Shown: positions 501-64,000 of the stretch, piece after piece
How the letters are laid out: every line of letters begins with the position of its first letter
Position numbering within the stretch: the first letter of the stretch is position 1
Source: Phallusia mammillata
Taxonomy: Eukaryota
Reading direction: 5' to 3'
DNA length: 64,000 bases
NCBI GenBank assembly: GCA_965637545.1
Contig: OZ281498.1
Span: forward strand, 8,432,001-8,496,000
Translations under genes and position numbers: made by a program
The notes under the pieces: generated by a model
Database searches by the model: none
The model's input: only the letters and a program-made list of their open reading frames with translations
Told to the model about the DNA's origin: nothing

Positions 501-745
501 CCTTGCTCAAAGTATTATGGATGTTTACAATTGACCCATACAACCACCATCATTTTCAGTTATACGCAATATTTGTTTTAAGGAACCTTATTACCTGCAG
601 GTAAAGTATTAGTTACACCTCACAAAAATGTTTCGTTTTTTAACCAGTAACTAAATTTTAAATGATTTTGAATTCATTATCACAGGTTTACATTTTTAGC
701 AAATATAATTTTGTTTCTGCTCTGCAATTTTTTTCTAAACTAAAT

Positions 746-1771
746 ATGGCCAACAACACTTCAACATTGGACGATACTTTCACGACTGTAAGTAAATCGA
801 CAATCATTGAAAAGTTCGCAGTTGGATCTGTGATTGCAATAACGGGTTATCTGACAATAACTTCGTTTGTATATCAGCTGTATTCACAACAGCAAGGCTT
901 GCAACTCAACAACCGAATTTGCACAGCCTCTTGTTTTTTGTTGCTTCTGGTGGGATTCCTTTTGATGATTGAGATTAATTTAACTGTGTTTGACACTACA
1001 GTGTGTACTTGGATAGAGAATGTGGCTGTTTTCCCAGCCAGCATTTCGTTATATCTTGTTTACTTTTCTTTGTGGCTTCGCCAGCGTTCAGTGTATAAAA
1101 CAGTTCACTCCAAGAAGGTGTGGTTGGAAAGAGCGAAGATTTTGAGCAAATTTGTTCTTGCTGGCATCACGTTTTTTACACTCCTGCAAATTGCAGCTGC
1201 ACTCACCAACAAAACGGAACATTGGCCAATAAAGAGATGCATCTCAGAACCTATCACACTTCGCTTTGTAATGGCAAGTTCAGTGGGTCTAGTTCTCTTT
1301 CAAATTTCACTTCTGATTCTGTATCTTTTACCTTTATCGACACACTACAGATTCTTGACGGGAACAAAGGGTGTCTATATTCGTAGTGCTTCGTGCACTG
1401 CAGTATGTGTAGCATCTGCAATTGCTTTCGTTTCCCTGATACAACTTTATCGTTTCTTGATATTGAACCTTGACTGGCTGACACATCCAGTTTTGGCAAG
1501 TATTGGCCTTAATTATTACATCATGAATGTCTTTGCATCGATTTTTTCTTTTCCTGATTACAAGAAACGATTGTTTCCCTTCAAGATGATTCAGATTCGA
1601 AAATTGGGAAAAGTCCATCCATCCGAAACTGCAGACAACGGTGGTGTGTGGAATGCCGAATCGCGAACAGCTGCAGGAAACGCTGAAGGAGAAAATATTG
1701 AAATGCAAGTCTTTAGTATCTCGGAGAAAATCAACAGCAAATGGGAGCCAGTGGAAATGAAAGAACAATAA
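746..1771 (+). CDS. Intronless orphan seven-transmembrane (GPCR-like) protein, 341 aa
   Basis: ORF 662-1771; likely start is Met29 at 746 (MANNTS, an N-glycosylation sequon in a short N-terminus). Seven hydrophobic segments, a Cys at the top of TM3 (CTWIE), LWLRQRSVY after TM3, FQISLLILYLLPL in TM5 and SFPDYKKRLFPF after TM7. No DRY or NPxxY. AATAAA overlaps the stop codon. Confidence 0.8.
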   Translation: MANNTSTLDDTFTTVSKSTIIEKFAVGSVIAITGYLTITSFVYQLYSQQQGLQLNNRICTASCFLLLLVGFLLMIEINLTVFDTTVCTWIENVAVFPASISLYLVYFSLWLRQRSVYKTVHSKKVWLERAKILSKFVLAGITFFTLLQIAAALTNKTEHWPIKRCISEPITLRFVMASSVGLVLFQISLLILYLLPLSTHYRFLTGTKGVYIRSASCTAVCVASAIAFVSLIQLYRFLILNLDWLTHPVLASIGLNYYIMNVFASIFSFPDYKKRLFPFKMIQIRKLGKVHPSETADNGGVWNAESRTAAGNAEGENIEMQVFSISEKINSKWEPVEMKEQ

Positions 1772-58553: not shown

Positions 58554-59334
58554 ACTATAGGTCTATAAATTATGCAAACAAGCTTTAAATACTTGCCTTG
58601 CCTGAACCTAGCAATTTCGTTGCTATACAAACAATCAAGTCTTGAATTTGTCGTATCTTTTTTTTTCGTCTTGTTCTGCGATTTTATTGGAACAAAGTAT
58701 AAGATTGTTTAACTTTTACCTCACGTGCAAAATACCTTATAATTTGTCGCTACTAATCATTTTTTAATTTGTTTTCAAACCTTAAAGGCAAAAGTTTTCG
58801 ATTTAGCTTGTGCGCAATCATGCGTCACAAGAAGTTTAGTCATGGAAATCATAATTTTCTGCCTGATTTTTTCGATTTTTTATTGTTGCTCCCGTTTTAA
58901 TTTAAATATCAAGTTTTATTTTTTTTTGCGCAACCGCTTGTTAAGGATATTCAATTGTTGTTTTAGAACGAACACTGTGGTTTGTGTAATCAAGTCATAT
59001 TTCTCAAGGACTGAAAAAACAATACGAATGTATACATCCACTATTTATTTTGTTAGTACGACATTGTACAAAGTTGTGTTTAGCATCGATACACCAGCAA
59101 AAACAAACAAAGTCCAAATCTGCCAAGCATGTGTGGCAAATCGGCAACGTACACTTCCAAACTAATTGCATCTACTTTGGATACCATGAAAAACAGTTAA
59201 ATTGACTCTAAAGTTTATCGTAACTTATAGTAAGATCGGACAATATTTACACACATGCGTTGAAATCTACGAAAGCTCTATAGTGGTTGAATACGGGTAT
59301 AGGAGTTTTATAATACATTCTAGCATTGTGTTTA

Positions 59335-62300
59335 TTAAATCATTGGGACACAAGCACTGGGAATGTAGACATCAGTGAGCTGAACATCCAATTTTGTTCC
59401 CACCTCAGTGATCACAACGGCTTTCTGGGGAGCATAGCTTTGTTGGCACCTAAAGCAGTGAATCGTTAATCACGATTCTACATCATATGCAGATAAAATT
59501 TTCATGAAATATGGGCGTGCTAGTGTATAAGTTGAAGTTGAGTTCTCTTTGTAAAAAAAAGAATAATGGTTGTGCAATGTCGAAAGTTTGGAACGCTATG
59601 GAGCGCAATCAGTTTAGGCCTACCATATTTCTATCCCTAAGAAGGAGGACACAGCAATCGGGCAATATCTTGTTTTTTTGCAACACATTGTTGAAAAGAA
59701 CATGTAAAAACCCTTTGAGTCCCACAAAAATTTAAAGGCTTCAGAAATTAGACGGCATACAATAGTTTGGATAAACTTTCGTTTATCACACCACAACACT
59801 AAAATAAGCTTGTATTTTTTTAAAATGTAAAAACTGAATTCTTCAAAAAATAAAAATATGTAAAAATATGGGGAATATGTATAAAGGCATAATTGTCACA
59901 TATGTATTTGATAAATCAGACATTCCTTAAAAAGGAGGACATTTGGGCCCTTTTTATTGTCCTCGGAGGACAACTTGTTTTTCGTCTAAAAGGAGGACAT
60001 GTCCTCCAAAAAGAGGACGTATGGTAGGCCTAAATTAGTTGGACACAATTTGCGAGGCACTATGTGTGTAATCTTGAAAGAGGAGACGTTACTGGGACCA
60101 GTCGAAGGGGCCAAAAAAACTAACCGCCTGGGTTAGGGCTGTACTACGTTTCGCAATCCCATTTAAGTTTTGTTTATAAGTAAGGCAGCTCTGTACAAAT
60201 ATTTCAACTTTTAGAGAGAAGTGCTTAGAAAATGACAGTTAGTTATAACCTGTAGGCCAATGCTTATGCAATTATTTTCAAATATGTCATGTCACACAAT
60301 ATTTTATTAAGATTTCTGTGTTAGTTTCAATGAGTACGACGGCTATAGTTGTCCATTTCTTGTGAAGCTCCAACCTGTCATGTTCAAAATTAGACTATAT
60401 CTGTAAGCTTACCGCATGGCCTCAAAACGGCTCAAGATACACCCAGTGCCCAACACTGTAGTAAGTAATCTCACAAAAACTCATACAGACCCTATTGTTA
60501 AGTTCAATCGACAGAAATTTTACAAAGGTGTTTTCATATTTTGTGTTTACCCGAGCCTGGAGCCCGTGCAAGTGTCTGTGTTGCTGCATCGGACTTCAGT
60601 AAACCACTGGAAGCGTCCATCGTAGTGAAACAATTCGACCTCCTCGTCCGAATATGCATAACGCCTTGCCTTGGTGAGATAAGTCACCGCCTCAACTTCG
60701 TCGCACAACGGTTCAGCTCCTGTAGAAAATCAATTCGAGATATAAAGTGACACACTATATTTATATATATCAGTTTACATTATATCAGTTTTGAACGGTA
60801 ATTGCATTAATACAGCACAAATGCATCAAAAAAGCTTTTTGATTGCTAAGACGTTATATCTCAGTTACATGCTCATTTTAGTGTTGTTTTGTATGCTATT
60901 ATATGTATCAATCATAGTACACCAAGCGTCATACCGAATCAGCCGGTCACCAAGTGAAATGTAGATGAGCATTTTTGATCATATTATTGCATTTGTGTTT
61001 GAAAATCATAATGTCGACGTAAGATCGGAAAAATGTTCTAGGGCAAACAAAGATGAGAAACACTGGTAATTGCATTATCGTTTTTTCCCGTGACGTCTTA
61101 GTTTATATTTTAGTGTTTTGAAAAGTAGGTAATTAAAATTTATCTATTTTTCTTACGGGGAACGATATAAAAAAAGGTTGAGAACCACTGCACTAATCTA
61201 TAATATATAGAATTTTTAACAGTACCTGAGGAATGGTCTCGGCGCAACCTCCTGCTTTTTAGCAAAAGATTTATGTCGAATCGGAAACCCGGGCTACTCA
61301 GTCTTTCCCTTATGAGTTCTGCTTCGGCGCTTGGAACATCATTTCTCAACTCCCCAAACGGGTTGACGGGTCGGTTTTCAAAATCGCTTGGGAAAGAAGA
61401 TTCGAAGTGACTTTCACCAAGTTCAATGGTGACGTTACAATCTACTGGCACATCAGCTGGTGTTTGGAGGAACCATCTAAAGGAGAAATAGACTTCTATT
61501 GTGTTACCACAATTTTAGGTACCAGTCGTATTCAGGTTTCAAACGTATATCGGTCAAGGAATGAACTGGTCAAAAGTTGTAAGTCGTTCAGGCTAGGGCT
61601 TGATTTTTAACAAAAGGGGTTTGATTCGGCCTGACTACACACTCGGGATTAATTTTGTCGCATTTAAGTCAGCTTTGGAGTCGGATTTGGTATGTTGTTT
61701 TTTAATCTGGCTCGGTCCAGGTTTTGGGCCAAGACTATAGTCTTTATAACATTGGGCCGGGTTGGGACCTAATCTCAGCCCCGCATGGTCGTCACAGTAA
61801 AGTTTCGAATCGTATGAAACTGGTCAACAACCCGCTGAAAGATCTGATTTTTGATTTGACTGGATGGAGAACAAGGAATCTTTATACTTTCCTAAACTTT
61901 TTATGCAGCAATAAGACTTGTTATAATAAGTTCTGAAAAACTGGGCCCCAGAAAATGTCGACATTTCTAAATTTTCTTCCAGTCCCCCATATAATGTTAT
62001 AAATGTCTAATCATTGGAAACCATTTAGGGAAAGTTTGTGTTAAGGGGCAAAATCTCAAAACAAGCCGCCGATGAACACGGTATCTATATATTAAAACAA
62101 GACAAAAGATGGATAAATCGTTGAATGAGACCTCAATGGCCTTTCCATTAAACATCACTATGCGTATACCTGTGTAGGATTCGTCTTAACTTGGAAACAC
62201 AAGCATCATGTATTTACTTTATATGACAGCAGTCTTGTAAAGCAATCCACTTCTTTGGAGACTTACGTGTATGTTTTGAGGACGCCTTCACCTTTTTTGC

Positions 62301-63971
62301 TAAACAGATTTTGCATTTTACACGATAAAGTTTCGTTGTTCAAATCACAAGGCAAGTTGTTTTCTGAATCCGCAAAAATCGGAGTACAACCAGAGTAGGC
62401 TGTAAAACAAAAGTTTCAAATGTCAATTGCAGTAAAAAATAGATTTAAACGACAGAATTTTAGAAACTATTTCATGTATCTTTGAACAAAGTTAAATAAA
62501 TCCACTTTATGGAGCCTAAATAAAAACAGAGTGTGTTACCTAAGCAATATGTTTGTTTTGTTTTAAAAATTATAAGAGTTGACGCGATATACGCTTTTTA
62601 CAAAGAATGAAAGGATTTATGGCACGCATTTAGGCTAAAAGGACACCTATTCGACAGAATAGCAACAAAATATCAGGTTAAAACCAAATTTACGTTCAAA
62701 TGGCTGATCCAGCCACATCATAAGGTTATCTCAAATTTTCTGTATATCTGCAATGCAAACCAAATACAGCTCTTTTCCAAAATATGCTCATATACAGCCC
62801 TTAAAGCTTTGTGTATTAACAAACAATTATGAAGATGACCTGAACAAGGCGTTAAAAGATCGGTGCATATTATACAGTTGCAAAAAGAGCTGCACATATT
62901 GGATTCCGAATTTGACGTTTTGTTCGTAATTGAACAGCCGTGTACGTACGTTCGCAATAGGTGCCGTCCGAGTAAACGTCTTCTGCATTATCCTCGCATA
63001 TGCAGGAATACCAGCCATCATCGTTGTAACATGTAGCGTGTACATCGCAGCGGTTATCCTCATCTTCGCATTCGTTTATATCTGAAAAATCAATACAGGA
63101 TTTTTGTTTGTTTCATTTTTATCCTCTGTGGGCGGGCAACGCCTTCCGTCGAGCTGCCTGTTTTATTGCAAGTCCGTTGATCATTTTTTATTTGATTTTT
63201 TCGAGGCAGTTGGTAACCTTTAGTTCAACCCATCGGGAACCACTGGGTTGGAGCAATGCCGCTTAGGTTTCTTGCTCAGGGAAGCACAAGCGACCGAGAT
63301 TGGATTAGAAACCATGACCTTGTGATCAAAAGGCGGTTGCGCTAATCACTCGGGCAATTTCTTAAGTGTGTTCCATCTCAATTTACGTTGCACAGAAACT
63401 CGATATCAAACTGAAATATCGTTGTCCAGTGCCAGACAAAATAACGGACATTTGTGGTATATATCAAATGGTGGAAAACAGTTGTTTGGTATTTTACACG
63501 ATATATTTTGGGGCATGTGTCCCCTGGAAACGCCAATATTACATTTTACCTGAGTGTCGCTAATTAATATTCCTGTGTATGTAAAAGTAAGGTATATTAG
63601 TAAAATGTACTTTGCGTCATAGTGAAAACGCCAGAATTCCATTAACACAGTAAACCAAAATCTAAACATGCACAAAGTAGAAGTCATTGAAAGCCAAAAT
63701 GGGATACAGGGCTAAAAAATGGCCAAAAAAACTGCGCAGAAAACGGTACTAAAGATTTCCAAGATAAATTTTGTTGACAATACAATTTACTCTATAACCG
63801 GCTAAGTTAACAGTTTCATTGCAACAAACAGAAAAGTCAATAGTTTACCTGTACAGTTGTACCCATCACCAGTGTAACCTGAGTTGCATGAGCAGTTGTT
63901 TCCACCGTCGATGTTGATGCAATGAGCGTTATCTCCACAGCTATGAAGGTCCAAGTCGCATTCATCAACGT
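59335..63971 (-). CDS. 3' part of a mosaic protein: cbEGF repeats, Cys-containing pro-region (weakly CUB-like), furin site, neurotrophin/Spaetzle-like cystine-knot domain; 5' end lies beyond the window
   Basis: Exons (minus): 63849-63971 (DVDEC..EGF), 62950-63081 (DINEC..EGF), 62267-62399, 61226-61476 (ends KSRRLRRDHSSG), 60551-60719 (AEPLCDEVEAV...FQWFTEVRCSNTDTCTGSRLG), 59335-59449 (CQQSYAPQKAVV...DVYIPSACVPMI*). All introns are GT-AG with matching phases (1,1,2,1,2). AATAAA overlaps the stop. The EGF call is secure; the cystine-knot call is by motif recognition. Confidence 0.8.
59615..60032. mobile_element. hAT MITE in the last intron of the cystine-knot gene, 418 bp
   Basis: Perfect 13-bp TIR TAGGCCTACCATA; GGAGGACA subterminal repeats; TSD AATCAGTT / AATTAGTT. 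Confidence 0.88.
63105..63357 (-). mobile_element. tRNA-derived SINE (degenerate)
   Basis: Minus strand: A-box-like TTGCCCGAGTGATTAGCGC, B-box-like GGTTTCTAATCC, then CTTCCCTGAGCAAGAAACCTAAGC (resembles the CCTTGAGCAAG.CACTTAAC core common in SINE2 families) and an A-rich tail. The tail boundary is approximate. Confidence 0.65.
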
Positions 63972-64000
63972 CTGGAAAATGTATTGGTAGCAACAATCAA

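What the first reader, a model, noticed from the sequence alone, without database searches (positions are those of the whole stretch)
59335..63971. Neurotrophin/Spaetzle-like ligand domain behind a furin site, fused to calcium-binding EGF repeats
Seen in sequence: six phase-compatible minus-strand exons, which the ORF track shows only as unrelated fragments or misses, join into EGF-EGF-pro-region-KSRRLRR|DHSSGAEPLCDEVEAVTYLTKARRYAYSDEEVELFHYDGRFQWFTEVRCSNTDTCTGSRLGCQQSYAPQKAVVITEVGTKLDVQLTDVYIPSACVPMI*. The predicted mature peptide is 98 aa. Established knowledge: neurotrophins are furin-released cystine-knot dimers with the pattern C..K..A....EV.V...Q(Y)F.E.(K/R)C..C.G..C...KAL..I..ACVC. Spaetzle-family domains have the pattern LC...Q...E.C..C..C.Q.Y...D...PSCC.C. 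This peptide mixes both (QWFTEVRC, KAVV and SACV are neurotrophin-like; LC, CQQSY and IPS are Spaetzle-like). Canonical neurotrophin and Spaetzle precursors have no EGF repeats, and clear neurotrophin/Trk genes have been reported missing from Ciona. Inference: this may be an undescribed, matrix-tethered or latent neurotrophin/Spaetzle-superfamily ligand released by proprotein convertase, a candidate for Toll-like, p75-like or RTK signalling in a lineage thought to lack it.
Basis: partly seen in the sequence, partly recalled or inferred. Interest (0 to 1): 0.9.

Follow-up and report, generated by a model that had tools for sequence, protein, structure and literature searches.

The report
EGF protein ending in Spaetzle-like domain
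The six exons are real and form the tail of a sea-squirt-type gene for a calcium-binding-EGF protein. It ends in a small, well-conserved domain that most resembles the insect Toll ligand Spaetzle but lacks one cysteine of the knot, a domain combination I found in no paper.

Summary
Observation confirmed. Six minus-strand exons with AG/GT borders join in one frame into a 306-aa C-terminal peptide. It holds two cbEGF domains, a 4-Cys linker, KSRRLRR, a 98-aa domain with 5 Cys, a stop and AATAAA.

The peptide aligns along its whole length (E 4e-49) with Ciona intestinalis 'uncharacterized protein LOC108949614'. A spliced Tara Oceans transcript encodes a third member with a signal peptide, about 14 cbEGF and the same domain. 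EGF repeats and end domain therefore share one mRNA in relatives.

Interpretation partly supported. A family profile searched against all PDB sequences hits only Drosophila Spaetzle C-106 (E 0.003, next hit 0.8), end to end, with all five Cys aligned. Language-model neighbours of three lineages are Spaetzle, NGF and IL-17 clusters.

Against it: Pfam models do not fire, NGF structures are not hit, and two AlphaFold models were poor (pLDDT 46-47). The sixth knot cysteine is absent in every member, and one lineage has only 4 Cys. The RxRR site is present in two copies but absent in the third. No RNA of this organism covered the exons.

Best reading: a divergent Spaetzle/neurotrophin-superfamily domain with an incomplete knot, on a secreted cbEGF protein. 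The scan noted another Spaetzle-like gene elsewhere in this genome (s1-361529, unchecked).

The parts
63849..63971 (-). Exon 1 in the window: a calcium-binding EGF domain. The gene continues 5' beyond position 64000.
   Evidence: AG acceptor and GT donor, in frame. Pfam EGF_CA 1.2e-08 and EGF_3 6.4e-10, both above the gathering score.
62950..63081 (-). Exon 2: second calcium-binding EGF domain
   Evidence: AG/GT, in frame. Pfam EGF_3 4.8e-07 and EGF_CA 1.9e-06. Aligns to P0006 residues 644-688.
62267..62399 (-). Exon 3: start of the linker or pro-region, with three conserved Cys and an N-E-T sequon
   Evidence: AG/GT, in frame. The C..PI..PCD..LSC..Q pattern is shared with the Ciona protein. 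No Pfam family.
61226..61476 (-). Exon 4: rest of the pro-region, with a fourth Cys and an N-V-T sequon; ends with the dibasic site
   Evidence: AG/GT, in frame. Weakly conserved and of variable length among relatives. No Pfam family.
61239..61259 (-). K-S-R-R-L-R-R, a furin-type R-x-R-R site followed by Asp
   Evidence: Read from the sequence. Aligned with R-T-R-R followed by Asp in Ciona LOC108949614. Absent in P0016. Cleavage itself is inferred.
60551..60719 (-). Exon 5: first half of the Spaetzle-like domain (Cys1-Cys3, motif VELFHY..FQWF)
   Evidence: Phase-1 intron upstream and phase-2 intron downstream, as in L007 and L002. 46-53% identical to P0006, P0001 and P0004. Atlas neighbours Spaetzle 0.94 and 0.93.
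59335..59449 (-). Exon 6: second half of the domain (Cys4, long hairpin, Cys5) and the stop codon
   Evidence: Invariant columns C, Q, Y, P, A, I, K, V, S, C across three lineages. Aligns to the C-terminal hairpin of Spaetzle C-106.
59331..59336 (-). AATAAA polyadenylation signal overlapping the TAA stop
   Evidence: Read from the sequence.

Best explanation
The window holds the last six exons of a gene for a secreted extracellular protein. It is built from calcium-binding EGF repeats and ends in a roughly 95-residue domain of the Spaetzle/neurotrophin (cystine-knot cytokine) superfamily.

The domain keeps Cys1-Cys5 of the knot but has lost Cys6. At most two intrachain disulfides (1-4 and 2-5) can form. 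Cys3 is left unpaired in the ascidian copies and is gone in a planktonic relative.

Between the EGF array and the domain lies a variable linker. In this gene and in its Ciona relative the linker carries an R-x-R-R site.

Inferred mechanism: a furin-type convertase cuts there in the secretory pathway. This frees an 11-kDa acidic peptide, or leaves it non-covalently attached. The peptide dimerises, perhaps through Cys3, and binds a receptor, as Spaetzle does Toll.

Shown: the gene model, the architecture, its conservation, purifying selection on the domain, and weak but specific similarity to Spaetzle C-106. Inferred: the fold, the disulfide pairing, cleavage, dimerisation and any receptor.
For: - Gene model: six AG/GT exons in one frame, colinear with Ciona LOC108949614 at E 4e-49.
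- One mRNA in a relative: contig L008 (Tara run ERR1719494) is spliced relative to genomic L002. It encodes a signal peptide, 14 EGF stretches by Pfam, and the same end domain.
- Exon structure: a phase-1 intron before the domain and a phase-2 intron in the codon before Cys4 in the window, L007 and L002.
- Constraint: dN/dS is 0.10 for the domain against 0.35 for EGF exons, L002 against L008.
- Homology: a family profile against 177,635 PDB sequences gives Spaetzle C-106 at E 0.0029 and 0.0036, with the next hit at 0.8. It covers profile positions 3-93 against chain 8-104, and all five Cys fall on Spaetzle Cys.
- The score rose tenfold when one more lineage was added. The single Ciona sequence alone gives E 0.038.
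- ESM-Atlas neighbours of three lineages are Spaetzle, NGF and IL-17 clusters, at 0.88-0.94 with 175-200 shared features.
- AlphaFold secondary structure shows two long beta hairpins, the second between Cys4 and Cys5.
- The RxRR site is aligned in two genes.
Against: - Pfam Spaetzle, NGF and IL17 models give no hit on the domain in any lineage, even at E 10.
- Halves of the domain and P0016 alone find nothing in PDB.
- Both AlphaFold models are unreliable (pLDDT 47 and 46), and fold searches on them returned noise.
- The defining six-cysteine knot is not present.
- P0016 has no RxxR site, so release by a convertase is not a family-wide feature.
- No RNA of this organism was seen on these exons. 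The two runs that hold the stretch look like DNA, and the RNA-labelled runs touch only repeats.
- The E-value of 0.003 is suggestive, not conclusive.
Confidence: 0.62

Rival explanations
1. The end domain is a lineage-specific cysteine-containing beta-rich module with no common ancestry with Spaetzle or NGF. The resemblance comes from cysteine spacing and hairpin-type sequence patterns.
For: No Pfam hit. Marginal E-values. No confident model. Language-model neighbours score only 0.88-0.94, a range that shuffled proteins reach 4-10 times in 100. The knot is incomplete.
Against: Spaetzle C-106 is the only hit below E 0.8 in the whole PDB sequence set and is aligned end to end. The score improves as family members are added. 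Three lineages independently have the same clan as nearest neighbours. Many other Cys-rich folds in PDB are not hit.
Confidence: 0.2
2. The domain is an IL-17-type ligand of the 'T1C' kind, a knot that has lost the Cys3-Cys6 disulfide, rather than a Spaetzle or neurotrophin relative. Its partner would then be an IL-17 receptor.
For: PMC11087794 defines T1C as Cys1/4 plus Cys2/5 only. That is exactly the pattern in P0016 and L002. IL-17 clusters appear among the Atlas neighbours at 0.84-0.86, and one mixed Spaetzle/IL17 cluster is the top hit for P0016.
Against: No IL-17 structure is hit in PDB at E 10, though all solved ones are of the vertebrate type. Pfam IL17 does not fire. Spaetzle clusters rank above IL-17 clusters in two of three lineages. 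The same paper reports T1 types as lost in tunicates and vertebrates.
Confidence: 0.1
3. The domain is never released. It serves as a C-terminal dimerisation or anchoring module of a cbEGF matrix protein, as the C-terminal cystine knot does in mucins, von Willebrand factor and Slit. This concerns function and is compatible with Spaetzle ancestry.
For: P0016 has no RxxR site between the EGF array and the domain. The odd Cys3 could make an interchain bond. The Ciona protein also carries a TIL-like stretch (E 1.6e-4 to 2.7e-4, just under the cut-off), as gel-forming proteins do.
Against: The R-x-R-R plus Asp site is conserved in position between two genes only 34% identical. The linker is long, variable and poorly conserved, as a tether or pro-region would be. 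No CTCK-type protein is hit in PDB.
Confidence: 0.25

Closest known systems
Drosophila Spaetzle C-106 (PDB 3E07, 4BV4, 4LXR; Pfam PF16077)
   Same: A C-terminal domain of about 100 aa at the end of a secreted precursor, set free by cleavage after Arg. It aligns end to end with Cys1-Cys5 in register. It shares C-x-Q-x-Y after Cys4, a Gly-containing turn in the long hairpin, and I-P-S before the last Cys.
   Different: Spaetzle has seven Cys: a complete knot plus an interchain Cys. This family lacks both Cys6 and the interchain Cys. The Spaetzle pro-domain has no EGF repeats, and a clip-domain serine protease cuts it, not furin (established knowledge). The Pfam model does not recognise this family.
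Vertebrate neurotrophins NGF, BDNF and NT-3 (Pfam PF00243), and fly DNT1 and DNT2
   Same: A furin-type R-x-[KR]-R site before a mature domain of about 100-120 aa. The motif Q-W-F-x-E-x-x-C before Cys2 resembles the neurotrophin Q-Y-F-x-E-T-x-C (the neurotrophin motif is from memory). NGF clusters are among the Atlas neighbours at 0.85-0.90.
   Different: No NGF-family chain is hit in PDB, and PF00243 does not fire. The C-x-C end of neurotrophins is reduced to a single Cys. Neurotrophin precursors are small and lack EGF.
Invertebrate IL-17 ligands of the T1C disulfide type (PMC11087794)
   Same: An incomplete knot keeping only Cys1-4 and Cys2-5, and the same clan.
   Different: No IL17 profile or structure match. 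IL-17 precursors are short, have no EGF array and are not pro-protein processed. T1 types are reported absent from tunicates.
Profibrillin and asprosin (an analogy of mechanism only; established knowledge)
   Same: A long array of calcium-binding EGF domains followed by a furin site whose C-terminal fragment is released as a signalling peptide.
   Different: Asprosin has no knot-like cysteine pattern and no sequence similarity to this domain. No homology is claimed.
Ciona intestinalis 'uncharacterized protein LOC108949614' (XP_026690971 and isoforms)
   Same: The same architecture, exon phases, convertase site and 5-Cys domain. Identity is 34% over 306 aa and about 46% within the domain.
   Different: A different locus with no nucleotide similarity. 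Whether it is a paralogue in the same genus or the orthologue in another ascidian could not be settled, because the window's species is not known to me.

Membership tests
Spaetzle (Pfam PF16077) | Match to the family profile at the curated threshold | tested here: not met
   hmmscan at E up to 10 gave no family on window exons 5 and 6, P0006:836-934, P0008:780-959 or P0016:860-966.
Spaetzle (Pfam PF16077) | Sequence similarity to the solved C-106 domain over its whole length | tested here: met
   The family profile gives E 0.0029 and 0.0036 at 20.9 bits, positions 3-93 against chain 8-104, with the next hit at 0.8. A single sequence gives E 0.038. Weak but specific.
Spaetzle / NGF cystine-knot cytokines | Six knot cysteines forming three intrachain disulfides (1-4, 2-5, 3-6) | tested here: not met
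   Five Cys in the window, the Ciona protein and (as far as seen) L001; four in P0016 and L002. The position of Cys6 holds V, S or E.
Spaetzle / NGF cystine-knot cytokines | Fold of two pairs of long twisted beta strands | tested here: inconclusive
   AlphaFold2 twice gave two long hairpins, but at pLDDT 47 and 46 and pTM about 0.3. Foldseek against PDB and VIA-align wide gave only noise.
Spaetzle / NGF cystine-knot cytokines | Proteolytic activation site just upstream of the C-terminal domain | tested here: met
   RRLRR then D in the window and RTRR then D in Ciona, aligned. Not present in P0016. Only the site was tested, not cleavage.
Spaetzle / NGF cystine-knot cytokines | Dimeric ligand that binds Toll, Trk or p75 | not testable with these tools
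   Needs protein chemistry and binding assays.
Neurotrophin (Pfam PF00243) | Match to the NGF profile or to solved NGF, BDNF or NT-3 chains | tested here: not met
   No Pfam hit. No NGF-family chain at E up to 10. Only Atlas neighbours at 0.85-0.90.
IL-17 (Pfam PF06083), T1C type | Knot reduced to Cys1-4 and Cys2-5 | tested here: met
   The pattern is exact in P0016 and L002. The window and Ciona copies keep an extra Cys3.
IL-17 (Pfam PF06083), T1C type | Match to the IL17 profile or structures | tested here: not met
   No hit.
Calcium-binding EGF (Pfam PF07645) | Profile match above the gathering score with the D-x-[DN]-E-C start | tested here: met
   Exons 1 and 2 score 35.4 and 28.4 bits against a cut-off of 27. 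D-V-D-E-C and D-I-N-E-C are read in the sequence.

The most novel reading that the evidence does not exclude
Tunicates, which the literature says have lost neurotrophins, Trk and the complete-knot IL-17 types, keep a true member of the Spaetzle/neurotrophin superfamily. It is hidden as the convertase-released C-terminal peptide of a large cbEGF matrix protein, and it acts as an endogenous ligand for a tunicate Toll-like or other LRR receptor. That would be a protein ligand for a deuterostome TLR, and a new way of storing a knot-type cytokine in the matrix.
Probability: 0.15. Interest if true: 0.9.

Novelty: new variant of a known kind. Interest (0 to 1): 0.66.

Why it matters
Papers state that Ciona lost neurotrophins and Trk (PMC2586362, PMC2772990, PMC13663574) and that tunicates lost the ancestral IL-17 knot types (PMC11087794). 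No endogenous protein ligand is discussed for Ciona TLRs in the 2026 repertoire paper (PMC12816324).

A conserved, strongly constrained Spaetzle-like domain in at least four lineages (the window, Ciona intestinalis and two metagenome organisms) would give a concrete candidate ligand to test. It would also add two things:
- a new architecture for the superfamily, namely a cbEGF array followed by a knot-like domain;
- a new case of knot erosion.

The closest named protein is annotated only as 'uncharacterized', and its locus name appears in no searchable paper.

Tried and rejected
- RNA support: one sequencing-run run and one read-laying run. X1 and X2 have flat depth over introns and exons and contigs colinear with the genome, so they look like DNA. 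The RNA-labelled runs X3 and X9 touched only the intronic repeats. No junction could be confirmed or refuted.
- Pfam on each exon and on the whole domain of two relatives: only EGF families, plus a TIL-like stretch just under the cut-off in the Ciona protein.
- AlphaFold2 on the Ciona domain with 6-row and 7-row alignments: pLDDT 47 and 46. Foldseek against PDB had a best E of 1.6; VIA-align wide had a best Z of 2.3. These are uninformative, not negative.
- Representative search with exon 5: six hits. P0002, P0003 and P0005 are repeat proteins without the cysteines and were rejected as spurious.
- PDB searches with each half of the domain and with P0016 alone found nothing.
- Species of the window: the only long ORF (662-1771) is not in the collection and has no homologue. 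Rfam and tRNA scans were empty. The species stays unknown to me.
- Second copy: none in the window.
- CTCK, TGF-beta, PDGF and Noggin readings: no such chain among the PDB hits. Noggin appears only as a lower Atlas neighbour.
- Left undone: the window's own spliced 98-aa peptide was never submitted whole to Pfam, PDB, Atlas or AlphaFold. It has no single reference and I did not type it. The Ciona and Tara orthologous domains stood in for it.
Full report
**1. Observation**

I read 59200-64000 on the minus strand and joined the candidate exons by script. With these borders every exon has an AG acceptor and every internal exon a GT donor:

| Exon | Coordinates (minus strand) |
|---|---|
| 1 | 63849-63971 |
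| 2 | 62950-63081 |
| 3 | 62267-62399 |
| 4 | 61226-61476 |
| 5 | 60551-60719 |
| 6 | 59335-59449 |

- The six pieces give one open frame of 306 codons ending in TAA TAA.
- K-S-R-R-L-R-R lies at 61239-61259.
- The 98 residues after it weigh 11.0 kDa, have pI 4.6, and carry Cys at 10, 49, 55, 62 and 94.
- An AATAAA signal at 59331-59336 overlaps the stop.
- Exons 1 and 2 each pass Pfam's gathering score for EGF_CA and EGF_3. The other four exons match no Pfam family, even at E 10.
- The gene continues 5' beyond the window.

**2. Relatives and the gene model**

A search of 1.84 billion representative proteins with exon 5 alone (55 aa) gave three real hits, P0001, P0004 and P0006. It also gave three repeat proteins that I discard.

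*P0006, the Ciona protein.*
- P0006 is 934 aa. By exact look-up its cluster holds the RefSeq isoforms of Ciona intestinalis 'uncharacterized protein LOC108949614'.
- The window's spliced peptide aligns with P0006 residues 606-933 in one colinear alignment, E 4e-49 and 34% identity.
- That alignment runs through both cbEGF domains, the four linker cysteines, R-R-L-R-R then D against R-T-R-R then D, and the end domain.
- The Ciona locus (L007, AP043573.1) shares no nucleotide similarity with the window beyond a SINE-like scrap. The two are therefore different genes or different species. I could not tell which, because the window's species could not be established.

*P0016, the Tara transcript.*
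- P0004 sits in a 90% cluster with P0016 (966 aa), encoded without interruption on a 3,025-nt Logan contig of Tara Oceans run ERR1719494 (L008).
- Against the genomic scaffold L002, this contig's matching blocks lie next to one another or overlap slightly, while in L002 they are separated by introns. It is therefore spliced mRNA.
- P0016 has a hydrophobic N-terminal signal-like sequence, 14 EGF stretches by Pfam, the same 4-Cys linker and the same end domain.
- The refuting condition 'EGF exons belong to a separate transcript' therefore fails in a relative at the RNA level, and in the RefSeq models of Ciona.

*Exon structure and constraint.*
- The intron before the domain is phase 1 in the window, L007 and L002. 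The intron inside the domain is phase 2, in the codon just before Cys4, in all three.
- Between L002 and L008 (dS about 0.4), dN/dS is 0.10 for the domain and 0.35 for three EGF exons. The end domain is the most constrained part measured.

*RNA of this organism.* I could not confirm the window's own junctions. X1 and X2 show flat depth across introns and look like DNA. The RNA-labelled runs touch only the intronic repeats.

**3. What the end domain is**

*Sequence profiles.*
- Pfam's Spaetzle, NGF and IL17 models are silent on the domain in all lineages.
- A profile of the family searched against all 177,635 distinct PDB sequences returned Drosophila Spaetzle C-106 as the two top hits, at E 0.028 and 0.034.
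- After adding P0016 the E-values became 0.0029 and 0.0036, with the next hit at 0.8.
- The Ciona domain alone by phmmer finds only the same two chains, at E 0.038.
- The alignment runs from two or three residues before Cys1 to the C-terminus. It puts Cys1-Cys4 on Spaetzle cysteines. It puts Cys5 on the middle Cys of Spaetzle's C-C-K-C, which is the first Cys of the C-x-C.
- Halves of the domain, and P0016 alone, find nothing.

*Language-model neighbours.* Nearest clusters in the ESM Atlas were checked for three lineages:

| Query | Nearest clusters and scores |
|---|---|
| Window exon 5 | Spaetzle 0.94 and 0.93, NGF/Spaetzle 0.90, IL-17 0.84 |
| Ciona domain | Spaetzle 0.90, NGF/Spaetzle 0.89 |
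| P0016 domain | Spaetzle/IL-17 0.90, Spaetzle 0.89 and 0.88 |

These scores are leads, not proof, but all ten best named hits fall in one clan each time.

*Structure.* AlphaFold2 with the shallow family alignment gave pLDDT 47 and 46. Only the secondary structure is worth noting: two long hairpins, the second spanning Cys4 to Cys5. Foldseek and VIA-align on these models gave noise.

**4. The knot is incomplete**

- All members end with a single Cys where Spaetzle and neurotrophins have C-x-C.
- The window, Ciona and L001 copies keep Cys3, whose partner would be the missing Cys6.
- P0016 and L002 have lost Cys3 too.
- At most the 1-4 and 2-5 disulfides can therefore form. This is the pattern that PMC11087794 calls T1C in invertebrate IL-17s, and reports as lost in tunicates and vertebrates.
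- This is why I keep an IL-17-type rival, although neither the IL17 profile nor any IL-17 structure is matched.

**5. Mechanism**

*Shown:* a secreted-type precursor (signal peptide in P0016, N-glycosylation sequons here), cbEGF repeats, a long poorly conserved linker, an R-x-R-R site aligned in two genes, and a constrained Spaetzle-like end domain.

*Inferred:* a convertase cuts after RRLRR and frees an 11-kDa peptide. The peptide dimerises, possibly covalently through the odd Cys55, and binds a receptor.

P0016 has no RxxR site in its linker, only single arginines. Release is therefore either achieved differently there or is not universal. I give the non-released dimerisation-module reading 0.25. 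That reading concerns function and does not conflict with the ancestry claim.

**6. Comparison with what is known, and novelty**

- The closest known protein is Spaetzle C-106. Neurotrophins share the furin logic and a Q-[YW]-F-x-E-x-x-C motif; the neurotrophin side of that motif is from memory.
- By the membership test it fails two defining features: the curated profile and the six-Cys knot. I therefore do not file it as a Spaetzle or a neurotrophin, but as a divergent, knot-eroded member of their superfamily, with confidence about 0.6.
- I found no paper describing a fusion to a cbEGF array. The Ciona locus name occurs in none.
- The literature treats Ciona as having lost neurotrophins and Trk.
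- Verdict: a new variant of a known kind. It is of real interest to people working on Toll, neurotrophin and IL-17 evolution, but it still rests on weak homology statistics and has no structure and no expression data for this locus.

Noticed in passing
window 59844-60165, 60810-60970 and 63064-63385: Three intronic stretches have 100- to 400-fold the single-copy depth in the DNA-like runs X1 and X2, with many variant contigs and loose ends. They are high-copy interspersed repeats. Positions 63184-63282 are 76% like a stretch in the Ciona locus L007. ARAGORN finds no tRNA there.
   Followed up: partly
L002:1-900 against L008: In the Tara genomic scaffold the two exons of the end domain lie on the strand opposite to all upstream EGF exons of the same gene, although the transcript L008 is colinear. 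This is probably a mis-oriented piece of the scaffold, or possibly a real inversion in that organism.
   Followed up: partly
L007:5335-8981 and L007:25249-34145: Ciona LOC108949614 is flanked on both sides by other genes with EGF_CA domains, one of 155 aa and one of at least 1002 aa that runs off the locus. This may be a local cluster of cbEGF genes. I could not see whether the downstream one also ends in the Spaetzle-like domain.
   Followed up: no
window 662-1771 (+): An uninterrupted 369-aa ORF, with several hydrophobic stretches by eye, has no homologue at E 0.001 among 5.8 billion proteins and is not in the collection. It is either an orphan single-exon gene or a chance ORF.
   Followed up: partly
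window 1-64000: An Rfam scan at gathering thresholds finds no RNA family anywhere in the window. Decayed copies would be expected to fall below the threshold, so this does not refute that note.
   Followed up: no
P0006/P0008 residues ~100-211: The Ciona relative carries a TIL-like (trypsin-inhibitor-like) cysteine-rich stretch (E 1.6e-4 to 2.7e-4, just under the cut-off) and Ser-Gly repeats upstream of a roughly 400-aa region with no Pfam family. The N-terminal part of this protein family differs strongly between lineages.
   Followed up: no
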